Assembly: GCA_000708835.1 (NCBI GenBank) | Contig: DF237181.1 | Location: 69,474 to 133,473, forward strand | DNA length: 64,000 nt | Source: Klebsormidium nitens | Taxonomy: Eukaryota; Plantae; Klebsormidiophyceae | Reading direction: 5' to 3' | Shown: positions 506-62,690 of the stretch, piece by piece | Numbering within the stretch: the stretch's first letter is position 1 | Layout: the number at the start of each line of letters is the position of its first letter | Notes under the pieces: model-generated | Told to the model about the DNA's origin: nothing | Database searches by the model: none | Seen by the model: the letters and a program-made list of their open reading frames with translations, nothing else | Made by a program: the position numbers and the translations under genes

Positions 506-3500
506 AGTCTGGCACGGGTTCCGGGGAGGAGATCGTGTTCCAGGGCTTTCACTGGGAGAGTCACCGCCACCCGTGGTACCAGGAGCTGGCTGCCAAGGCC
601 GGCGACCTCGCCGAGTGCGGCTTCACAACCGTTTGGCTGCCCCCGCCTACCGAGTCGGTCGCCCCGCAGGGTATGCCCCTGCAAACCAAGCGATCGTTTC
701 GAGCGTCTTCAATACGGGCTGAGATAAGACCAAACTGAATATCATCGTTTCAAAGATGGATTGTACTATAATCATCGTCTAGAGAGGATCTGGCTAACCC
801 ATACTTCAGATAAGAGCTATTTTTGCTACCCTTCAGATAAGCTCGTCTAGGGTTGACGGGCTCCTCTGAGTTGGTGCCAAAATCGAGACTTGCGGTTGCA
901 ACGGACAGGTGTGAACGAGTCTGATCATCTAGCATGCTTGAGTTCTAATGCTAATCTCACGTATCCGCATGCTGCTCGTCGCTGGTGATGCTGCAGGGTA
1001 TATGCCTGTCGATCTCTACAATCTGAACACTCCGTACGGCTCGCAAGAGGAGCTTAAAAAGTGCATAGACGCGATGCACGAGCACAACATCCAGGTAAAG
1101 TCGCGCTCTGTCGAGTTCCCGAGACCGGGGCCGGTCGCTTGCTCCGCTGATAGTCTCCCGTTCTGGATGTTTATTTTCCAGGGTACATGCCCGTCGATTT
1201 CTATAACCTCAACTCGGCCTACGGGTCGGTGGACAAGCTCAAGGCTTGCATTGCGGCGTTGCATGACAAGGAAATCCAGGTGAGAGATTGGGAATCATCA
1301 AAGCTGCGTGGAGGCACGGCGAACCGTAACACTATCTGGGCGTGCTCCAGCTTCGCACATCCTTCCCTGCAGGGCAAGAGGCTGATTCTGCAGGTAGTAG
1401 ATTGACAAGCATACCCCAGTATATCTGCACTGTAAGGCTCTTGCCAGGTTATAGTGTTAGCAAATGACCTGGCACACAGCAAGTTGGAAAGCTCTTGCAG
1501 ATCGGCTTGCAGACGTTGTACGTCCAGGACGCCAAAGTCGCAGACCTGAGATTTCTGCAGACCATTAATTCCCCATCTTCATTTGTCTCTCGGCTCTGCC
1601 GCGGTCATTCGCCTTTAATCAGCGGGGCTTGTGACGTCGATTCTTCCTATCCTACAGTGAACCCCCTGAGCAATCTGTTAGCTTCCTTTCAATGCCCTGC
1701 CGTCAGCTCCTTTTGATGCCCCCGTCTCAGTTTTCTGTCTCCAATACTTCGTCTCCATCTCCTTTGAATCGCTCAAGTTCCCTCGTCGTTGGAAGCTTTC
1801 CCACATTGTTTGTGCGTTGTTCTGCCCTTCTCATCGCGCACTTCTCACGATCTTCAGAACAAACACCACTTCGAGGTGCTGGTCGTGACCCTAAGACGAC
1901 GAAACCCGAACTTTTGAAACCTGGAAGCTTTTGGAAACCCTGTCATCTTCATGCTTGCAGGTTTTGGGCGACGTCGTTCTGAACCACCGCTGCGCATCGA
2001 AGCAGAGCCCCGACGGCACGTGGAACATCTTTGGCGGCAAGCTCGCGTGGGGCCCCAACGCGATCGTGCGCGACGACCCCAACTTCAAGGGGCAGGGCAA
2101 CCCGTCGAGCGGCGACATCTTCCACGCGGCGCCCAACATCGACCACTCGCAGGCAGGCAAACCGCAAAGAATTGAACCACTGATGGTCGATATGGTTTGT
2201 GTCACTACCCGTCTAATTGTTGACGACAAAGATGGACACATTGAAAGTCATTGTTCTCGAGAGGTTTTGGCCACATTGACCCAAACCTAAAGCAAAACCC
2301 TGGCATATTTTGCAAGTGGACCGCTCGTGGTCAGAACCTGCCGACTGGGATCGTTATGTGAGGTTCGGATGGCTGTGACGCAGTTTCGGCCGTCGTAAAC
2401 ATCTGCGATCCGCTTGCAGGAGTTTGTGCGTCACGACATCAAGGGTTGGCTCGAATGGCTCCGCAAGGACATTGGATACGACGGCTGGCGTCTCGACTTC
2501 GTCAGGTGAGCGCTGATTGGGCAGTTGACCGGCGATGCAACTTGGTGCGCGCTCCCTTGTGCAATTCCTCTTTTATTAGACTTATTTTTGCGCTATCAAT
2601 AGATTTCTTTGCAAGCTGGTGACGACCACGTGTCATGAGAACGTGGCACGTTTCTTCTTCACAGGACGCTTCGGGTCGTCGTCTTGTCCGGTTGTCAGCT
2701 TGTTAACTAGACTCTCGGGCTTCGGTCTTTCTAAAAGAGGACTCCGTGTTGTCCATGGCACCAGGCACTGGAGTGAGTCTGTGCCTGAATTCAAACGGTG
2801 GGGTTGAGAGGTGCTTCGAGCGCTGTCAAAAAGCACTTCCGCTCAAACGGACCGAGCTTTTTCCGCGTCCTTGGCTGACAAGAAACTTTTCTGAACGTCA
2901 CAGGGGCTTCTGGGGCGGCTGGGTGAAGGAGTACATCGAGTCCAGCAAGCCCAGCTTTGCCATCGGCGAGTACTGGGACAGCCTGGCGTACGAAAACGGG
3001 CAGGTCTGCTACAACCAAGGTGCGGCCGGCTCTTCAATCTTTGTTCATTTGAGCACCTCACGCTCATTGCGCTTGCCAAAGTTTGCCACATGGTCGTTTC
3101 TCTCCTAAGTTGCTTTGGAGGCTCTCGAACCTTGTTTGTTGAGTACCTCACGCTCGTGGGGCATTCCAACGTTTGCAACCATGGTTCGATTTCTCCAATT
3201 GTTTCATTGAAAGCGAACGGTAACTTGGCCTAAGTCTGAGCTCCATTGGTAGACTGAGAGTGCGTTCTTCTACGAGCCTCGTCAGGAAAGCTTTTATGAG
3301 ATGCGGAGAACCAAGTCACACCCTTTTCCAATACACACAGCGACAGCGCATTCCCCCGACTTGAAAAGTACACCCGTTGAAGCCTGGTCCAGTCCAACAT
3401 ACGCGCTGAGTCTAGTTCCTGCCACGTGGCATCGCTCGCCTAGCTGCTAACGTGTTGCTGACGTGTCATTCGTCTATGCAGATGCACACCGGCAGCGGAT

Positions 3501-5262
3501 CATCAACTGGATCAACGCCACCGGGGGCGCTGCTTCAGCATTTGACGTTACGACCAAGGTGACTTGGCGCTTATCTTTGTCATATCCACTAGCGTCCTCG
3601 CTTTTCGACTGTTTTCATGGTTCGTGCAAAGGGCCATTCATAACTATGGACAGCTCCTTCTCCGACGTAATGATTGAGAAAGTAGAACGGGTGTGCTAGG
3701 CAACCAGTGATCAGTGGCATAAGCAACACCACAAGAACTTCCAAACTTTCTTGAAAATTGAGCCTTCAGTCTAGAGTCCGCGTGTGCACGTGATTTGGAA
3801 AGGCTGCACTTATCAGAGATGAGCTTGTTCTGCGAAGTGTCGTTCTGCGATTGGGTCCAGCAAAAAACTTTCTGTCGTCAAGCATCGCGTCCTTGACTCG
3901 CTGGCCAAATCCAGGCGGGTACAACATCTGCCAATGCGAATCCTGTTTCATTACAAAGCCTCCACTCTCTCTTCGGCACGTAATCCGCTACATCCGCCAA
4001 CATTCTGAGACTCCCAGCCGTATGATCTGCCAGTTCCTTCGGGCATTTTTCAAGCGATCGTCCGTTTACCTCTGCAGGGCATCCTGCACTCGGCGCTGCA
4101 CAACGAGTACTGGCGCCTGATCGACCCCCAGGGCAAGCCCCCCGGGGTGATGGGCTGGTGGCCGTCTCGCGCGGTCACCTTCCTCGAGAACCACGACACC
4201 GGCTCCACCCAGGTCCGACATCGTGGCCGTGACCAGGATCCTTTACCCCTTCTAGTTCAACTACTCCGCTGAAGTGTCGGTGAATGGTGGCGTTCCGCCA
4301 GAGCAATAAGGAAGCTGCTCCGTATAGGAAGCGTTTGTCGAGAAAGCAGGTTGTGGGCTCGGAAAGCTTGCAGCCGCATCGCATCGCTTGTGGAGTATCA
4401 TAGCCCATAGAAACATTCGTCACCCTGCGCTTGGCGCGCTGAGGGAGTCCCGAAGAGCTGTAAGAGCTACCGGTCACCTTCTGCCGTCTCGATGCTCCTG
4501 GTTCGCATTTCGAGCTTTCGCGGCTCTGAGGAAAGCCCGGCGCTGATTTTGTTTTGAGGTGCTACTTTGCAGGCACATTGGCCTTTCCCTCGGGACAAGC
4601 TGCTCCAGGGATACGCCTACATCCTTACCCACCCCGGAACGGTAAGCCCTTGATTCCGGCAGGGACTGAAAAGTCCACGCATAGTCCTTCATTACCGCTT
4701 GAACGTCTTCAACAAGGAGCCTCGGACTGAGAAGAAAGACCAAGCCTGAGCAGCTTGTTCGTTTACACTGAAGATTTGCAGTGAGCTAGCCGGACTACGT
4801 CCATCAGTTAAGCAGCATGGTCTGAACCTGACAATCTGTCACGTTTTACTCCTGAACCATAACGTCAGCGGCCTTTTACCCCAGCAGCTTATGCGCCAGG
4901 GCGGTCTAGGAACCGCGTTTTCCAAAAAAAGTGATTCCTCAATGGTGACGTGAGCGCTTCGTGTCCAGAATTGCATTCTCTTGCTGCAGCCCACCGTGTT
5001 CTACGACCACCTGTACGACTTCGGCATGCACGACCAGATCGCTGACCTCCTCAAGGCGCGCATCCGCGCCGGCATCAAGTGCCGCAGCCCAATCAAGATC
5101 CTGCACGCGACGATGGAGGGGTACGCTGCCGTCATCGACAAGAAGCTGTGCATGAAGATTGGGCACCTCGACTGGAGCCCAGCCAAGGAGAACAACCTCG
5201 AGGGGCGATGGGGGAGGACGCTAGACCGAGGGACGGACTACCAGATCTGGGAGAAGGAATGA
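506..5262 (+). CDS. AMY3: Alpha-amylase, GH13, plant AMY3-like catalytic domain (5' exons unresolved or outside the window)
   Basis: Exons traced at splice junctions: 506-670, [997-1094 OR 1182-1279], 1961-2152, 2420-2505, 2904-3019, 3482-3558, 4078-4212, 4573-4641, 4990-5262 (TGA). The spliced protein carries GH13 motifs [31 protein letters not shown] and [31 protein letters not shown] and [17 protein letters not shown] match plant AMY3. Confidence 0.93.
997..1094 (+). other. Alpha-amylase alternative exon A (candidate mutually exclusive exon)
   Basis: ctgcag|GG TAT ATG...ATC CAG|gtaaag; 98 nt; encodes [33 protein letters not shown]. Confidence 0.85.
1182..1279 (+). other. Alpha-amylase alternative exon B (candidate mutually exclusive exon)
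   Basis: ttccag|GG TAC ATG...ATC CAG|gtgaga; 98 nt, same splice phases as exon A; encodes [33 protein letters not shown]. Confidence 0.85.
3041..3220. repeat. Diverged tandem duplication (~91-bp period) in an amylase intron
   Basis: ttgttcatttgagcacctcacgctcattgcgcttgccaaagtttgccacatggtc (3041) vs ttgtttgttgagtacctcacgctcgtggggcattccaacgtttgcaaccatggttc (3132). Confidence 0.75.
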
Positions 5263-8764: not shown

Positions 8765-9709
8765 ACTGCAGCAATATGTTTGCCTGGTATCAAGGATGCC
8801 GTTCTCCTTCCAATGCTGCTTTCATTCTCCTTGGGTCCTTCTTCTGAAGGCCAACTCTGGAACTTGGGGTTGCGTCTTGGTTTTCAAACCCCTTTTACTG
8901 AAGTGCTGAGAGACCTTTCCAATCAGCAGGCTTGCATTGCACAGTTTTGGGAGCGCAGTTGGCTGGGTAACATGCCTTGGTGCACAAGCGCGCTATTTTA
9001 GTGACCAACTATGGAACCTGGCTGCCAAAGTGCAGCTTTTGCCCAAGAGCTTTCACCCACTGGCATGAGTGCCACAGTGTGGGGATCTGCTCAGGAAGAA
9101 AGCGCTACAACTTCAAGGGGGAAGCTGAGCAATGCCAATGGGCGACAAGCTATGCACGGAGGAAGCGCAACGAAAGTTACCTAAGCGGGTATAAGCAGCG
9201 GCACGACCGTCATAAGCAGTTAACCTGAGCTCCTTGCAAGTTGCATGTACTTAGCTTAAAAATCTCTAGCTTTGCCAAATTTTAGATCCATTTCTAGAAA
9301 GCACAGAGCAAACGTAAGTACCTATATGTAACGCAAGTCTGAAGAGTTGGTGAGATTGCTAGAGCCAGAACTTCCGTTACAATTCGAGCCCCAATGGGCC
9401 AAGTTCTATAGACGAAATGACAAGTCTCCATCCTAATATTACTTCTCGCATAAGAAGGCAAGAGTTCACTTCCCCATATGCTAAATACTTCAACTTCAAG
9501 TTTTCTTTTCCACACGGCATTGCAATCTCCAAGAAGTGAATGCCAGAAAGGACGCCGAGCCATGCCCCTTCTCTTGACCTGCTGCATGCAGACGACCTTT
9601 CGATGAGGTGGCTGTGGTTCTCTGGCATTCAAAACGACGCATCATTGGTGTAAAATTGGAATTATGGAGGGCGCAGCCTTGAACAGCCTCGATTGATCTT
9701 TGCTAAGGG

Positions 9710-12700
9710 ATGGATTCCTCCGGCGTTCCTGAAATCTTCAACCGCGGCCTTGATTGCGTCGTCCGGCGAGCTGTGATTATTGGGAACGGGGCGGCGGGCG
9801 CAGAGAAGCAGTGCGTGGGCCTTGTGCGCGCACTGGGCCTGCCAGAGCGAAGCTGCCTGCTGCAGGTGGGGGGGTGCCGCCTGAAATTGGTGGTTGAGTG
9901 CTGCGTAGAAAGCGGTTTGAAGCTTGTGATGAAGTGCGTCAGGGAGGGTATGTGATGTGAGAAGGAAATATATGGTTTGATTGATTGGCGATGGAAAGGT
10001 TTTCGCAACCTGCACCTTGAACAAAGTCTACCCGCTGCACGATTGAAGAAACGGTACCACCGACTGCCTCTTTTTCTTCCAGGCTTGAGTTGACAGCGTC
10101 AATTCACTAGATTGCGTTTTTTGCACAATTGATGGTCAGTTTGACTCTTGATGCCATGTTATGAAAGTTATTTGATCCCCTGCCCCTTCTGACGGGACAA
10201 CCACAGATCAGATCGCTCGAAACTTCGTCCCGAACCCCCTCGTTAATTTGATCTGGGCGCAATCAGAGGGTTCCTGTTTTGCTTATTTGCTTGAAAACAT
10301 AAGCACCACCAGTTCTATTTCAAGGAAGCAAACTGGATAGGGTCTGTTTGGCAGCTCCAACTCTGTTCAAAACCTTCTTGTTCAATCCCTCTGTTCATAT
10401 CGAGCTCAGCCCCCCTTTCTTTGTCCCCCAGCGAGTAAACCGCCCTCGTGACGGCCTCCACCACTATCTGCGATGGCTCCCCCTGGCTTGGCACAACAAC
10501 CTGCACCGGACGCTCGCTTATCTGGCGAACCGCTCAACTCAAGTGGTCCCCAGTTCGTGGCTGCGTGAGGGGCGAAACGACGGGGTGCAGGAGGGCGCGC
10601 GGATCGGGGTTGCTCGAGACGTGCCCGATGCGGACCCGGAAGCAATTGCCAGGGAAGCGAACAGCCAGCTGAACAGGTGAGAATCGGTTTCGCTTTTTCC
10701 ATCGCTTACGACTCCGGTGAAGCAATTTGGTAGTTAATTGGTCTATGCATCTTCAGCGTATACACACTGCCGCCAGCTTTCGAACAGTGTAATCACCACG
10801 TTTGAGAGGAGGTTCATGCCATCCTAGTTTCCTTTCCTGACGCCTGTTGATATGCTGGGGAGGAGCGAGCGGCCAAAACTTGTCCAGCTAAGCCTAAGGT
10901 CGATCTGGCCAGGCGTTCCGCAGAACAAGGGACTGAAGTGCCCGAAGCTCGAAGTCTGGAGCCCAACTCACCGGCCCTCGTTGTCTACTGCAGAGAGGGC
11001 CCACTTCTTGTTGTTGCGTCGGGGCGCGACACGTGGATGCTGGCGGCCGAAGTCAAACGACAGGCGCCTTCGACCACCTTCGTTGTACAGGTGGGGACAA
11101 TATCTTGGCATTCCTGTCAAGTCGATGCGTGCCTTTTAGAATCATGATTTTCTGGACACAAAGTTGGTCAGTACATCGAAGTCAACATTTCTTCTTCGCG
11201 CAAGAGTCGAAGAGACGCGTATTCTGTTCGCCAGGCTGTCAAGCAACTGTAAGTCGGGACTCAGAGCTTCGTCCTCAATGATTAGAACTCGAGCTGAGTA
11301 CTCCGTCCCATTGCCTGGTCTTCAACCTCCTCCAGCACCAACTGTCCTGCTTTAGTTATGATAAGGTGCTGCAACGTTGCAGATTCTCGTTGTTTGTTAC
11401 TTGGTATCCACTGTCAGAACGTCAATCGTTTTGGCAAAAGTATGATACGGAGGAAGTTTGTTTGCCCTCGACATCACAGTACTTACAGTCATAGCAGCGC
11501 CAACTGTCTTCCGTATATGTCTTCCGTACCACGCTTTTCAAACGTCGGATTCAAGTGATCTTTTTCTTGATGTCGCCAGAATCATTCCTCGGCCTTATAC
11601 CCAGCTCGTCTCTCTCCGTGCGTAGATTCAGCACCCCCGAGCGGACGTCTCCCAGTTCGATCTAGTTATCACTCCTGCCCACGACTTCTATCCGACCACT
11701 CCCGTGGGCCAAGCCGAAAGGCGGGCGGCCCTGCCTTTTTTGGGCAAGCACCAGCAGCTCATACCCAAGCTGCCGGTTGGGCTGCAGCAATTACTATTGC
11801 CCCAGCTAAACCCCCCTTCTAAAAACATGGTGAGGGAGTGAAAACGCTGCTTGCATCGTCCCTTCGAGGTATGGTTCAAAAGGCGAGTTCCTTAGTCTCA
11901 TGAAAGGGTTCCTCCTGGGGTGACTGCCGGGTGGGTGTGCCGTTCCTGACACGAACGGCAGTCGAGTAACCCAAGTATGACTGGTAGGAGGTTGACAACG
12001 AGGGGCTTGAAGCTCGCTCAGCCAGCCGTGAATATTTCAAGCAACTCTGATTTTATACGTACAGGCTTGGTTGTGAAGGGTGACTTGTTGCTACACCCCG
12101 CACGTTACTCTATGTGGCGCTCTTGAAGTCTCCGATTCTAGCGCTACCCTGTGTGAGATCAATGAGGGATCTGGTCTGGCGGCCACAGTTGACGAGAATG
12201 GTAACATCTCACGTGTAGGGCCCGCAAAAGCATCATGTCGTCTCCTTCAGCACCACGTGCTTGCATGGTCGAACATTCCACAATGTTCGACCGCTTGCGA
12301 AGCGCAGCGGCGGCCCGCATACACCGGGCGACACAGACATCACAGCCGCAATCAAGTCTGACAAAAGTACCAGCATAGTACGTGACTCCCACCCTTTATT
12401 GACGCAGGTCCTAACAGTCGGCGCCCTCCACACTGTCGACACCGCCGTGCTGCGCATGGAAACCGCGCGTTGGCACGACGTTTTCTCCTCTCTCCCCGCC
12501 CCCATAGTCGCCGTCAGCATAGGCGGGCCGACCCGGCACTGTCCGTACGGACTCGACTTGGCGGCGGAGCTCGTGACGGGGCTTCGGACGATGCTGGCAG
12601 CGAACGGGGGGTGCGTACGGATGACGATGTCGCGACGGACGCCTGCGCACATAGCGCGGCACGTCCGGCAGGAGCTGGCTGGGGAGAGCCGGGTGAAGAT

Positions 12701-47100: not shown

Positions 47101-50100
47101 TATTTTTGCAGCTGAACAATCTTGAGCTGGCTGTGAACTTGGCCAAGCGTGGCAACCTACCTGGAGCGGAGAACCTGGTAAGTATCATCCCCTTTGGGCA
47201 GAGTGGGTGCCACCTTGCACAATCAGCTGCTCATGGTTGTGCGAGAAAAGATTACAACAGGAGAGTCGTCGGTTGCTTCCAGCTTAAGTAATAACTGCAC
47301 CTAATATTGCTGGCTTGTGCGGGGCAAAGAGGGCTATCCCACCCTTGCTTGCAGCGCAGTCAGCAGGCATTTGGGCTGTCGCTGTGACCATCCTTCAGCT
47401 GCCCCTTATGCTTGTCCACATGTCTTTCGCAGGTGATCCAGCGCTTCCAGGAGTTGTTCCAGCAGCTCAAGTACAAGGAGGCTGCAGAGCTGGCTGCCGA
47501 GTCCCCGCAGGGGATTCTGCGCACCCCCGACACTGTGGCCAAGTTCCAGGTCAGTATGGGCTGGTATTCCTTATCCAGTAAAGGAGCTGCAATGCATGTC
47601 TACTCACCTCTCTGCCCTTCATTAGCCCTCGTTTTGAATTCACGTTCAAAGTACCGCAAACCTGCAAGACCTGGCCTCAGATTTTTGCCGACCTATGGCG
47701 AGACCTACACTTGCTGAGTACGATCGGGCAGAAAGGGGCACCCGTTTTGATGGGCACAGATCCTGATGCTTTTCTCATAAGACCCACTTTTTTTGTTCGT
47801 GCAGAGTGTGCCGGTGCAGCCCGGCCAGACGTCGCCGCTGCTGCAGTACTTCGGCACGCTGCTGACCAAGGGCAAGCTGAACGTGTTCGAGTCCCTGGAG
47901 CTGTCGCGCCTGGTGGTCAACCAGAACAAGAAGAACCTCCTTGAGAACTGGCTGGCCGAGGACAAGCTCGAGTGCAGCGAGGAGCTCGGGGACCTCGTCA
48001 AGGTGCGCACTGGTCAAGCAGAAACGATGATTTTTGCATCTGCAGTATCTGTATTGACAGCTGTGGGTGACTGACTGAGTAGTCGCGGATCCGCGTGTAT
48101 GCGGTAACTGTACTGCCCGATTAGGGACATCCTGGCATGGGAGCGGAATGTCTGCTTTTGCTGCTGGCAGCTCACGCATGTCCAATTGGTTGGCCAGCAG
48201 AACATGATTGGACAAAAGTGGATTTCCGCATGTGGGCTCTGTCAACGTGAGGGCTGGAACTGATACTTCCCCTCTCGTTATGTGCAGACGGTGGATGGGG
48301 ACCTGGCCCTCAAGGTATACATCAAGGCCAAGGCGACGCCCAAGGTCGTGGCCATCTTCGCGGAGCGCAACGAGTTCGACAAGATCATCGCCTACTCCCA
48401 GCAAGTCGGCTACACGCCCGACTACCTCTACCTGCTGCAGACGCTACTGCGCACCAACCCCGCGGGCGCGGGCAACCTCGCGCTCATGATGGCCAAGATG
48501 GAGGGCGGCTGCCCCGTCGACTTCAACACGATCACCGACCTGTTCCTCCAGCGCAACATGATCCGCGAGGCGACGTCGTTCCTGCTCGAGGTGCTCAAGC
48601 CGAACCTCCCGGAGCAGGGCCAGCTGCAGACCAAGGTGCTGGAGATCAACCTGGTGACGTTCCCCAATGTCGCGGACGCGATTTTGGCGAACGGCATGTT
48701 CAGCCACTACGACCGCCCGCGCGTCGCGCAGTTGTGCGAGAAGGCGGGGCTGTACACGCGCGCGCTGCAGCACTACACGGACCTGCCCGACATCAAGCGC
48801 GTGATCATCAACACGCACGCGATCGAGCCGCAGAGCCTGGTCGAGTTCTTCGGCACGCTGTCCCGCGAGTGGGCGCTTGACTGCATGAAGGAGCTGCTGC
48901 TGGTGAACATGCGCCAGAACCTGCAGATCGTGGTCCAGGTCGCCAAGGAGTACACCGAGCAGCTCGGCCTCGACTCGTGCATGGGCCTCTTTGAGGAGTT
49001 CAAGTCCTACGAGGGCCTCTACTTCTACCTCGGCTCCTACCTCTCCACATCGTGAGTCTATTGCCCTCTATTTCTTCTTAATAGGCTGTTGGATGTTCAA
49101 AATTGGTCGAAGTCTTCAAGCCAGTCAGAATGTTTCTTTAGATGTTCAGCGGTTTTGGGTACATGTATATTTGTTCGAAAAGACCTGGCGGGCGAAGTTA
49201 GTCTGGCATGCAAGCAAAAGGCTCAGGAGGTTGGATCCCGCGATGAGGGTTGTTTTGCGTCTTCTGTTAGCAAAGACAAGAAAGCAGCACCTTTTGGTGT
49301 AGGAAGAAGCGATTTCTGTGAGGTGAGCTGGTGAGTGGGATAAGTTTCTGATTCGCGTCCGTCTCGTTGGCTGGCTGCAGAGAGGACCCGGACGTGCACT
49401 TTAAGTACATTGAGGCCGCCTCGCGCACGGGCCAGATCAAGGAAGTGGAGCGCGTGACGCGCGAGTCCAACTTCTATGATGCGGAGAAGACCAAGAACTT
49501 CCTCATGGAGGCTAAGCTGCCGGACGCGCGCCCGCTGATCAACGTGTGCGACCGCTTCAACTTCGTGCCGGACCTCACGCACTACCTCTTCACCAACAAC
49601 CTGCTGCGCTACATCGAGGGCTACGTCCAGAAGGTGAGCAGCTGACCTACGGTAGTTCAATCGGTGTTGTAGATTTGCTACGAATTCTTTTTCTGGGCGG
49701 TGAGGTATGCACTGCAAAGGCAGGCTAAGCGGCTTGGTTTTCAAGCTATTGTTGTGCTTTGTCTTTCATAGAGTGCTCAGGAACGACTCGGAAGGACTGA
49801 CGTCTGGACGACTTGGATGCTGACGTCCGGATCGTTCAAGCCTGTGAAGGGAGTAGATACGGTCAAGTCAATCATCGCTGTGTCAAATACTGACATGGTT
49901 TTTGAGTTCTGAGGGTCAAAGTGATTCTGGCAGGTTTGCAGGGTCTAATGTTGTGCGAGCCCTGATCTGATTGTTTTGCTGCAGGTCAACCCCGCAAATG
50001 CCCCTCTGGTCGTCGGCCAGCTGTTGGACGACGAGTGCCCCGAGGACTTCATCAAGAACCTCATTCTGTCCGTCCGCAGCCTGTTGCCAGTCGAGCCTCT

Positions 50101-61277: not shown

Positions 61278-62690
61278 CTATAAGACTAACTCGTACGAAA
61301 GTCGAATGTCAACTTCTGGAATTTTTTTGAAGTCCTTGCGAAAGATTGCAAGGCTACCTGGCTCGTCAAAATCGTAAATATCGTACATTGACAGCTTCAA
61401 CTTCTGTAAGCCAGGCATTGCGTCGCATATCGTCCGGATCTGCAAGTACGACTCGAGTTTGCAGACGGAATGAATCTCTAATTGCATCAAATCTGAGAGC
61501 GTGTGACGGCCATGCTCGGGTTCTGACAGGCGCAGCCCAACAAGGACGCCACCATCTACGCTCAACTTTCTGATCTTTGGAGGCAGCTGCGCCAGAAATC
61601 TACCAATTGGCAGGTCTTCCGTCAATTCTTCCGAAGACTTCAGGGTCAGGGACTTGATAGAATGACTCTGGAGGAGGACGGGTGCCACAATCTCTTTCCA
61701 ATCGTTTTCTCCGATTTCCACTATGCTCAGGTGATCCAGGCGAGTACATGGCTAAGTGAAAGATAGTGGACGCTGCGAGTCTCCTATCGTGAGTGTCAAG
61801 CTTCGCAACGAAAGAGTGTTCAGCCTGATCACGTTGCAACAGATGACCAGGTCAAGAAGTCTGGGTGCTTGTAAGTCCAGAAACATGAAGCTGTTGTTCG
61901 TCCCGCACAGGTCTAAGGACGTCAACGTTTCAGAGTTGATGATGAACTTGGTGTCTTCAATTGACTTCCCAGATTCGGCAGGATCGTCGTACCCTTCCGC
62001 AACAGCCTTTAGAGTGTCAAGCTGTGTGCACCTTTGCAGCAGATTCTGGAGAGCTTGGACGGCTATGATTGCTTTGGACAGGTCGATGCATTTCAGTGAC
62101 GAGCTGGGTGCCTTCCAGCTCAGCATTCTCACAGAAACCGTACCGTATGGGAGTGAAGATACGCTAAAGTATCTCATTCTCAATCCCATCAGACTTTCCA
62201 TGATGTTCCTGCTTGGTTCTGGATGAGACAAAGTATAGTTGCATTCTCGGAAAGACCCTCCTGATCTTCTGTTCTCTTCCGATTCAGAATCTCTGTCCCT
62301 TGTCTGATCCAGGAAGTAGATGCCGACCTTTTCAGGTATCCGCTTAAGCAGTGGGCTTGAGAAGATGAGATGATGCGCAACCTCGTTATGGAACTCCGCT
62401 GTAATCAGCAGATTGAGTCTATCAACAGAGAATTGGGGATGGTGGATGAAGGCTGCAAGTCCAAGCGCCTCGTCTTCGCTCCTCAAAGGCCATTCCAAGC
62501 TTTTGACCTGATGAGCTAGCTTCTGAAAGCGCTTGCAAACTAGTTGTGCGCGGACCAGATTCAGTGCAGCCTCCACGCGCTTCTCAGGCAACCTCTTGTC
62601 TGCATCTTTCCTGCAGGCGCCCACCGATTCAAGTACAGATATAACCACTTCGTCAGGTAGCAGCTCAAACAGAGATAAAGAAGGAGCCAT
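61278..62690 (-). pseudogene. Intronless F-box/LRR gene interrupted by one in-frame TAG
   Basis: ATG at 62690 (MAPSLSLFELLPDEVVISVLESV..LVRAQLVCKRFQKLA, F-box-like), followed by LxxLxL repeats. TAG at 61752-54 is followed in the same frame by PCTRLDHLSIVEIGEN..., open to 61278. Confidence 0.65.

What the first reader, a model, noticed from the sequence alone, without database searches (positions are those of the whole stretch)
997..1279. Candidate mutually exclusive exon pair in an AMY3-type alpha-amylase
Seen in sequence: two tandem exons (997-1094, 1182-1279) are both exactly 98 nt, with the same entry and exit phases and intact AG/GT sites, and are separated by an 87-nt intron. They encode paralogous peptides sharing 21/33 residues, and 10 of those 21 use different synonymous codons. 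Including both frameshifts into a TGA early in the next exon (GG TTT...TTC TGA), and skipping both also frameshifts, so exactly one is required. Established knowledge: this segment (GYMPxDxYxLN..YG..EL..I..H) is the conserved GH13 barrel stretch just before the DxVxNH motif, and mutually exclusive splicing is well known in animals but considered rare in plants. Inference: silent divergence with protein conservation means both exons are under purifying selection. The result would be two amylase isoforms differing mainly in one helix ([15 protein letters not shown] vs [15 protein letters not shown]), possibly stress- or temperature-regulated. A possible branch point (ctgat ~1146-1150) lies only ~50 nt from donor A, which could sterically enforce exclusivity.
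Basis: partly seen in the sequence, partly recalled or inferred. Interest (0 to 1): 0.88.

Follow-up and report, generated by a model that had tools for sequence, protein, structure and literature searches.

The report
Either-or twin exons in algal amylase
A starch-degrading enzyme gene of a streptophyte green alga carries two adjacent, diverged copies of one 98-base exon; distantly related algae keep both as working code, so each mRNA most likely uses exactly one, a splicing style common in animals and rare in the plant lineage, though no RNA was available to show it.

Summary
Exons 997-1094 and 1182-1279 are both 98 nt, have AG/GT sites, and share 21/33 residues, 10 of them through different codons. 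Including both or neither gives a premature stop.

New evidence comes from five contigs of two related algal lineages, from four independent assemblies. All carry both exons, 98 nt each, open and with intact splice sites. The flanking introns there have diverged to random-level identity. Against these orthologues, changes are mostly synonymous and third-position in the amylase frame: A dN 0.08/dS 1.4, B dN 0.18/dS 1.0. So both exons are translated, which is only possible one at a time.

Marchantia and Closterium orthologues have one intact copy, so the pair is lineage-specific and predates the split from the sampled relatives.

I found no transcript, so mutual exclusivity is inferred, not seen. 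"AMY3-type" is wrong: the gene belongs to a streptophyte amylase family with a coiled-coil N-terminus. Steric exclusion and stress regulation remain untested.

The scan has already flagged many similar exon pairs in other genes of this genome, which its notes call Klebsormidium nitens. This is one more member of a known kind.

The parts
506..670 (+). Constitutive upstream exon of the amylase catalytic domain (beta1-alpha1-beta2; ends ...SVAPQ plus the first base of the Gly codon). The 5' boundary (506 or 508) is not verified.
   Evidence: It is 94-96% identical at protein level in the relatives. Donor G|GT is at 670/671.
997..1094 (+). Exon A, 98 nt, phase 1 in and phase 0 out. It encodes the beta2-alpha2 loop, helix alpha2 and the first residue of beta3 (barley AMY1 G51-Q84). 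Signature residues are ..NTPYGSQ.. and ..CIDAMHE..
   Evidence: Against the orthologue: 18 nt and 5 aa differences, dN 0.079, dS 1.38, 13 of 18 changes at third codon positions.
1095..1181 (+). Intron of 87 nt between the twin exons, by far the shortest in the gene (the others are 267-681 nt). It is 75-76 nt in the relatives. A conserved CTRAY branch-point-like motif lies at 1147-1151.
   Evidence: No unusual fold.
1147..1151 (+). Putative branch point CTGAT for exon B. It is conserved as CTGAT or CTAAT exactly 31 nt from the last intron base in all four sequences. The branch A is intron position 56 here and 44-45 in the relatives.
   Evidence: Function is inferred from the consensus and from conservation only.
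1182..1279 (+). Exon B, 98 nt, with the same phases as A. It encodes the same structural segment, with signature ..NSAYGSV.., and keeps the family-invariant Ser at position 12.
   Evidence: Against the orthologue: 24 nt and 9 aa differences, dN 0.18, dS 1.04, 15 of 24 changes at third codon positions.
1961..2152 (+). Next constitutive exon ([10 protein letters not shown]..., GH13 region I). It holds the TGA reached when A and B are both included.
2420..5262 (+). Rest of the catalytic domain and the C-terminal beta domain, in six exons: 2420-2505, 2904-3019, 3482-3558, 4078-4212, 4573-4641 and 4990-5262 (stop included). With either twin exon the reading frame from 508 runs 402 residues to the stop.
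   Evidence: Homology to barley AMY1 extends over the whole domain (via proxy P0256).

Best explanation
An ancestral 98-nt exon of a plant-type GH13 alpha-amylase gene was duplicated in tandem in the lineage of this streptophyte alga, before it split from the sampled relatives. Both copies have been kept as coding exons. Each is 3n+2 long, so an mRNA carrying both or neither runs into a premature stop and should be lost to nonsense-mediated decay (inferred). Productive mRNAs therefore carry exactly one, giving two enzymes. The isoforms differ at 12 of 33 residues. Three differences are in the beta2-alpha2 loop next to the substrate-cleft residues Tyr-Met. Nine are in helix alpha2 and the turn after it, on what looks like the exposed face. 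The catalytic and buried residues are unchanged. The short intron between the twins may also hinder A-to-B splicing, which is possible but unproven. Shown: the anatomy, the frame logic, conservation and purifying selection on both copies, and a single copy in outgroups. Inferred: alternative use in RNA, NMD of the aberrant forms, and any functional difference between the isoforms.
For: Anatomy and frame logic. Five contigs from four independent assemblies, representing two related lineages (two JGI metagenomes and two Logan runs), all hold both exons. Each is 98 nt, open and has AG/GT. Window-versus-relative introns are at shuffled-sequence identity (183-188 of 300 against 178-187 for shuffles), while exon A is 82% and exon B 76% identical. 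dN/dS against the orthologue is 0.057 for A, 0.175 for B and 0.037 for four constitutive exons, at dS 0.75-1.4. Nonsynonymous changes are depleted: Fisher p = 6e-7 for A and 8.5e-4 for B. Random placement of the same number of changes reaches so few amino-acid changes with p <= 1e-4. Third-codon-position excess in the amylase frame is 13/18 for A and 15/24 for B. Between the two closer relatives, B has two differences, both synonymous. Quartet sites are 9:0:1 for A-with-A and B-with-B, so there was one old duplication and no gene conversion. Marchantia and Closterium loci have one intact copy, and about 135 streptophyte and other plant proteins show one segment each.
Against: No transcript or transcript-derived protein of this gene was found in any collection I could search, so no junction has been seen. 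Exon B accumulates amino-acid changes about six times faster than the constitutive exons, so it could be a minor or weakly used form. Introns of 75-87 nt are ordinary in land plants, so A-to-B splicing may well occur, and exclusivity would then rest on NMD alone. No conserved competing RNA structure was found.
Confidence: 0.78

Rival explanations
1. One copy is a dead pseudo-exon, a relic of a tandem duplication that is never productively spliced. The gene makes a single enzyme.
For: No transcript evidence for either exon. B evolves faster than the rest of the gene. Closterium shows that decayed exon fragments do occur at this locus in other algae.
Against: At a divergence where introns are randomised, both copies keep their length, frame, splice sites and a synonymous, third-position substitution pattern in the amylase frame. 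The decayed Closterium fragments look quite different: they are short and truncated.
Confidence: 0.07
2. One exon is constitutive, and including the other is a 'poison' event. The A+B transcripts carry a premature stop and are degraded, which tunes amylase mRNA level and makes no second protein.
For: A+B inclusion gives a stop at mRNA nt 379 with six exon junctions downstream. The 87-nt intron has normal splice signals and a branch-point motif.
Against: A poison exon is not translated in the amylase frame. In an A+B transcript, B would be read in a shifted frame. Yet B's substitutions are synonymous-biased and third-position-biased in exactly the amylase frame, and it keeps family-invariant residues.
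Confidence: 0.1
3. The duplication is an assembly artefact or a collapsed or expanded repeat.
For: None beyond the tandem arrangement.
Against: The copies are only 68% identical at nucleotide level. The same arrangement is present in five contigs from four other assemblies.
Confidence: 0.01

Closest known systems
Animal two-exon mutually exclusive clusters policed by frame and NMD (FGFR2 IIIb/IIIc) or by steric hindrance (alpha-tropomyosin exons 2/3). The mechanisms are summarised in PMC6071210; the gene examples are from my own knowledge.
   Same: Tandem-duplicated homologous exons of equal length and phase. The length is not a multiple of three, so double inclusion or double skipping gives a premature stop. 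A short intron separates the twins, with the downstream branch point 44-56 nt from the upstream donor.
   Different: Here no RNA data show the exclusivity. The organism is a streptophyte alga, where the minimum donor-to-branch distance is unknown and short introns may be tolerated. The protein is a metabolic enzyme whose barrel segment is swapped.
Docking-site/selector RNA-structure MXE clusters (Dscam, 14-3-3zeta, srp; PMC6071210, PMC7404189)
   Same: Origin by tandem exon duplication.
   Different: No conserved complementary intronic elements were found here. The single 18-nt complement in the window (1134-1151 / 1618-1635) is absent from the relatives.
Other candidate either-or exon pairs noted by this scan in the same genome (DTC carrier, GSH1, OEP80-like, pyruvate kinase, P4H, NHX, CNGC, MUT9-like kinase). 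These are unchecked AI notes.
   Same: Same genome and same anatomy: tandem twin exons where one must be chosen. One note also describes 98-nt exons.
   Different: Several of those notes report RNA support. This gene has none so far.
Barley alpha-amylase 1 (PDB 1HT6, 2QPS)
   Same: The catalytic domain is homologous over its whole length (E = 2e-131 for the close proxy P0256). The swapped segment corresponds to G51-Q84, just before region I (D88-H93).
   Different: Barley AMY1 is a secreted ~405-aa enzyme. The algal gene's relatives carry a long coiled-coil N-terminal extension of several hundred residues (orthologues total about 920-1090 aa).
AMY3 (chloroplastic alpha-amylase 3)
   Same: Plant-type GH13 catalytic domain, 72-75% identical in the region-I exon.
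   Different: AMY3 has tandem PF23166 (CBM45-type) N-terminal domains (P0007). This family has a coiled coil instead, and orthologues score higher with it (83-86%).

Membership tests
Mutually exclusive exons arisen by tandem exon duplication | Adjacent exons are homologous to each other | tested here: met
   21/33 aa, 67/98 nt, tblastn E = 2e-13.
Mutually exclusive exons arisen by tandem exon duplication | Same length, same entry and exit phase, intact splice sites on both | tested here: met
   Both are 98 nt, phase 1/0, with AG...GT. The same holds in four related sequences.
Mutually exclusive exons arisen by tandem exon duplication | Including both or neither destroys the reading frame or the fold | tested here: met
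   Premature stops at mRNA nt 379 (both included) and nt 619 (neither included).
Mutually exclusive exons arisen by tandem exon duplication | Both copies are maintained by purifying selection as coding sequence | tested here: met
   dN/dS 0.057 (A) and 0.175 (B) at dS about 1. Fisher p = 6e-7 and 8.5e-4. Third-position bias is present, and flanking introns are randomised.
Mutually exclusive exons arisen by tandem exon duplication | Mature transcripts contain exactly one of the exons | tested here: inconclusive
   A junction pattern scan of metagenome contigs gave only chance hits. Protein searches found no product of this gene of 149-472 or 508-1615 aa. Raw RNA-seq reads cannot be searched with these tools.
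Plant-type GH13 alpha-amylase | Alpha-amylase catalytic domain plus C-terminal beta domain, homologous to barley AMY1 | tested here: met
   Close homologue P0256 matches PDB 2QPS/1HT6 at E = 2e-131 over the full length, and Pfam PF00128 + PF07821. The window's exons are 58-100% identical to P0256.
Plant-type GH13 alpha-amylase | Region I DxVxNH and the catalytic Asp/Glu/Asp motifs | tested here: met
   The spliced translation contains [19 protein letters not shown] and LENHD. The assignment of the catalytic residues rests on my knowledge of barley AMY1.
AMY3-type alpha-amylase | N-terminal tandem starch-binding domains (CBM45-type, Pfam PF23166) | tested here: not met
   The window lacks the N-terminus. 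In the relative's locus, the upstream 328-aa ORF has no Pfam hit and is 48% identical to the coiled-coil N-terminus of P0256. PF23166 is found in AMY3-like P0007 but not in P0002 or P0256.

The most novel reading that the evidence does not exclude
This alga and its relatives keep an animal-like, genome-wide set of old tandem either-or exons, and the amylase pair is one of them. On this reading the two amylases are functionally distinct and exon choice is regulated. The differences could act through the exposed face of helix alpha2 (partner or starch-surface contact) or through the loop next to the Tyr-Met substrate-cleft residues.
Probability: 0.35. Interest if true: 0.75.

Novelty: new member of a known kind. 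Interest (0 to 1): 0.55.

Why it matters
Mutually exclusive splicing of tandem-duplicated exons is a major source of protein diversity in animals. In the plant lineage it is regarded as rare and is poorly documented. Here a pair of exons has been kept as coding sequence for a time long enough to randomise the surrounding introns, in a close algal relative of land plants, and it sits inside the barrel of a starch-degrading enzyme. Together with the many similar pairs this scan has flagged in the same genome, it suggests that this alga may use the mechanism routinely. That would make it a tractable system for asking how either-or exon choice is enforced outside animals. For starch biology, it predicts two isoforms of a still uncharacterised coiled-coil alpha-amylase family that land plants retain with a single version of this exon.

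Tried and rejected
1. A splice-junction pattern (end of exon A or B joined to the next exon, degenerate for window and relatives) was scanned in metagenome contigs. It gave 92 hits, none of them amylase, all chance.
2. Three large protein searches were run. Riccia P0002 region 625-780 returned only land-plant and charophyte orthologues. P0256 restricted to the region-I exon was run at two length ranges.
3. A MAFFT alignment of separate exon peptides to P0256 (A2) scattered the fragments and was not used.
4. Single-sequence AlphaFold of the proxy domain gave pLDDT 36 and was discarded. The 32-sequence alignment gave pLDDT 76 and was used only for secondary-structure boundaries.
5. Searches for competing RNA structures found nothing shared. 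Inverted repeats in the three introns of the window and two relatives do not match each other. The A-B intron folds no better than shuffles (z about 0).
6. U12/U2 incompatibility was considered and rejected by eye: the donors are GTATGC, GTAAAG and GTGAGA, none of them U12-like.
7. A third decayed exon copy was looked for and not found.
8. An exact look-up of an intronless-looking ORF (61755-62690, minus strand), tried to identify the genome record, found nothing on record.
9. Literature searches for this exon pair, for Klebsormidium MXEs and for the Logan run accessions found nothing specific.

Full report
**Observation**

The window is eukaryotic, with about 52% G+C and spliceosomal introns. 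Positions 506-5262 on the + strand hold the catalytic part of a plant-type alpha-amylase gene.

- Exon A is 997-1094 and exon B is 1182-1279, both 98 nt.
- Both are preceded by AG and followed by GT, and are separated by an 87-nt intron.
- Both enter in phase 1 and leave in phase 0.
- The peptides share 21 of 33 residues and 67 of 98 nt. Ten of the identical residues use different codons.

With either exon alone, the frame runs from 508 through eight exons to a stop at 5260-5262, a total of 402 residues. With both exons a TGA is reached at mRNA nt 379, inside the next exon. With neither, a stop is reached at nt 619.

The similarity is not chance. tblastn of A against the window finds B at E = 2e-13 and nothing else. 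A six-frame self-comparison finds no other tandem pair in the 64 kb.

One correction: CTGAT is at 1147-1151 and the putative branch adenosine at 1150. That is intron position 56, 31 nt from the last base of the intron.

**What the gene is**

A profile-free search with the region-I exon (1961-2152) against 1.8 billion representatives gave these best full-length hits:
- proteins from Riccia fluitans and Taxus, and from Mesostigma and Chlorokybus;
- two 129-136-aa fragments at 98% identity from JGI metagenomes and Logan assemblies.

The family is a ~920-1090-aa streptophyte alpha-amylase found from Closterium and Mesotaenium to seed plants.

It is not AMY3. AMY3-like P0007 carries two PF23166 starch-binding domains. 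P0002 and P0256 do not. In the relative's locus, a 328-aa ORF about 2.6 kb upstream of the catalytic exons is 48% identical to the coiled-coil N-terminus of P0256. The window itself starts only about 500 nt upstream of the catalytic domain, so this point rests on the relatives.

Other notes of this scan name the genome Klebsormidium nitens. My data agree with a streptophyte alga but do not prove the species.

**The key test: orthologous loci**

Exact look-ups of the two fragments returned five genomic contigs:
- L001 and L002, from two JGI metagenomes, form one lineage.
- L003 (JGI), L004 and L005 (two Logan runs) form a second, closely related lineage.

All five contain both exons in the same order. 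Each exon is 98 nt, open and has AG and GT. The intron between them is 75-76 nt.

The divergence from the window is large. Four constitutive exons give dS 0.75-0.84 at dN 0.028. The flanking introns align no better than shuffled sequence: 183-188 matches per 300 against 178-187 for shuffles (alignment). Unconstrained DNA is therefore randomised between these genomes.

Against that background both exons are conserved, and in the way coding sequence is conserved.

| Measure (window vs L001) | Exon A | Exon B |
|---|---|---|
| Nucleotide identity | 82% | 76% |
| dN | 0.079 | 0.18 |
| dS | 1.38 | 1.04 |
| Fisher test, nonsynonymous vs synonymous | p = 6e-7 | p = 8.5e-4 |
| Random placement gives as few amino-acid changes | 0 of 100,000 trials | p = 1.2e-4 |
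| Changes at third codon position of the amylase frame | 13 of 18 | 15 of 24 |

Between the two closer lineages, B has two differences, both synonymous.

Informative quartet sites group A with A and B with B at 9:0:1. So there was one duplication before the lineages split, with no later gene conversion.

B can be read in the amylase frame only when A is absent, and vice versa. These patterns therefore mean that both E1-A-E3 and E1-B-E3 mRNAs are translated. The arrangement in four independent assemblies, and only 68% nucleotide identity between the copies, rule out an assembly artefact.

**Distribution**

The Marchantia locus (L099) has a single homologous exon between the same neighbours. The Closterium locus (L098) has one intact copy plus short, decayed fragments of several exons, which show what unconstrained duplicates look like at this locus.

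About 135 family proteins each show one segment, with the consensus ..NSAYG(S/T)xEELKxCIEEMH... Both algal copies are about equally distant from these outgroups. B keeps the family-invariant Ser at segment position 12, where A has Thr.

**Where the difference lies in the protein**

By alignment to barley AMY1 (PDB 1HT6/2QPS) the segment corresponds to G51-Q84. It lies between strand beta2 and region I (D88-H93).

An AlphaFold model of the close proxy P0256:520-923, built with a 32-sequence alignment (pLDDT 76, pTM 0.82), gives these boundaries:
- beta2 ends at residue 45;
- helix alpha2 covers 73-84, which is segment positions 17-28;
- beta3 starts at 89, which is position 33.

The 12 differences between A and B fall at positions 7, 12 and 13 (loop), 17, 18, 19, 22, 25 and 27 (helix) and 29-31 (turn).

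The conserved helix positions 20, 23, 24 and 28 follow the spacing of a buried face. The variable positions are therefore probably exposed; this is an inference from periodicity.

The Gly-Tyr-Met-Pro start is identical in both. From my knowledge of barley AMY1, its Tyr and Met (Tyr52, Met53) line the substrate cleft.

The differences fixed in both lineages are position 7 (Leu/Tyr versus Phe), 12-13 (Thr-Pro versus Ser-Ala), 17 (Gln versus Val), 22, 25, 30 and 31. No consistent charge difference emerges.

**How exclusivity could be enforced**

What the sequence shows is that double inclusion and double skipping both give premature stops, with several exon junctions downstream. That is the standard substrate of nonsense-mediated decay, the mechanism described for FGFR2 (cited in PMC6071210).

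Steric hindrance is possible.
- The A-B intron is much the shortest of the gene: 87 nt against 267-681 nt.
- A CTRAY motif is conserved exactly 31 nt from the last intron base, as CTGAT, or CTAAT in L001.
- That leaves 56 nt (window) or 44-45 nt (relatives) from the donor of A to the branch point.

In animals such distances block splicing. That threshold is from my own knowledge and has not been measured in this alga. Land plants splice 70-90-nt introns routinely, so I rate a steric contribution at about one in three. A note of this scan on another gene says the same idea was not supported there (unchecked).

I found no conserved competing RNA structure and no U12-type donor.

Grau-Bove et al. 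(PMC6142364) report that exon skipping in Klebsormidium is, unusually, associated with short flanking introns. That fits twin exons separated by short introns, but it is only circumstantial.

**What is missing**

No transcript was found.
- A junction-specific DNA pattern found only chance matches in metagenome contigs.
- Protein searches ranked on a stretch identical between P0256 and the window found no product of this gene of 149-472 or 508-1615 aa.

So the relative use of A and B, any regulation, and the absence of A+B mRNAs are all unknown.

**Verdict**

The pair is real, at least as old as the split from the sampled relatives, and under purifying selection on both copies. It is best explained as a two-exon mutually exclusive cluster, with confidence about 0.78.

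It is a new member of a known kind: the mechanism is classical, and the scan has already flagged many such pairs in other genes of this genome. Its interest lies in the lineage, in its position inside the catalytic domain of a metabolic enzyme, and in its part in what may be a genome-wide habit.

Noticed in passing
window 2153-2419: The intron between ...NIDHSQ and EFVR... begins with GC (CAG|GCAGGC) and ends with AG. It is absent from the five related contigs, from Marchantia and from Closterium, where the two exons are fused. It is therefore probably a lineage-specific intron gain with a non-canonical donor. An in-frame GT donor 42 nt downstream (ATG|GTTTGT at 2194/2195) would add 14 residues. 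No other copy of the intron sequence exists in the window.
   Followed up: partly
L098 (Closterium sp. NIES-68) 9051-9101, 9370-9399, 10395-10571, 10962-11057, 11399-11609: The Closterium orthologue's introns contain short, decayed partial copies of several amylase exons (the E1, A/B-type, E3 and E4 equivalents). This indicates repeated local duplications that were not kept as code.
   Followed up: no
window 1134-1151 and 1618-1635: An 18-nt, 78% complementary pair links the A-B intron, including the putative branch point of exon B, to the intron downstream of B. Pairing would loop out exon B. It was not found in the relatives, so it may be chance.
   Followed up: partly
window 666-681 versus 993-1008: The donor region of the upstream exon (GCAGGGTATGCCCCTG) resembles the start of exon A (GCAGGGTATATGCCTG). 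The relatives' donors do not, so this is probably coincidence.
   Followed up: no
whole genome (scan notes): Sixty-seven notes in this genome mention mutually exclusive exons. Follow-up notes report RNA-supported pairs in a DTC carrier, GSH1, an OEP80-like protein, pyruvate kinase, a B3 factor, a histidine kinase, P4H, an NHX antiporter (also 98-nt exons) and a MUT9-like kinase. A genome-wide census, including the lengths of the introns between twins, would be worth doing.
   Followed up: no
window 48282-49055 (+): A 257-aa open frame that looked to me, from reading its translation, like a clathrin heavy chain exon. It was seen only while listing long ORFs.
   Followed up: no
L001 2704-3690: In the related alga the amylase gene has a 328-aa single-exon coiled-coil segment with no Pfam family. 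It is 48% identical to the N-terminus of the Closterium-like protein P0256. As far as my literature searches showed, the function of this conserved extension in a streptophyte-wide amylase family is undescribed.
   Followed up: partly
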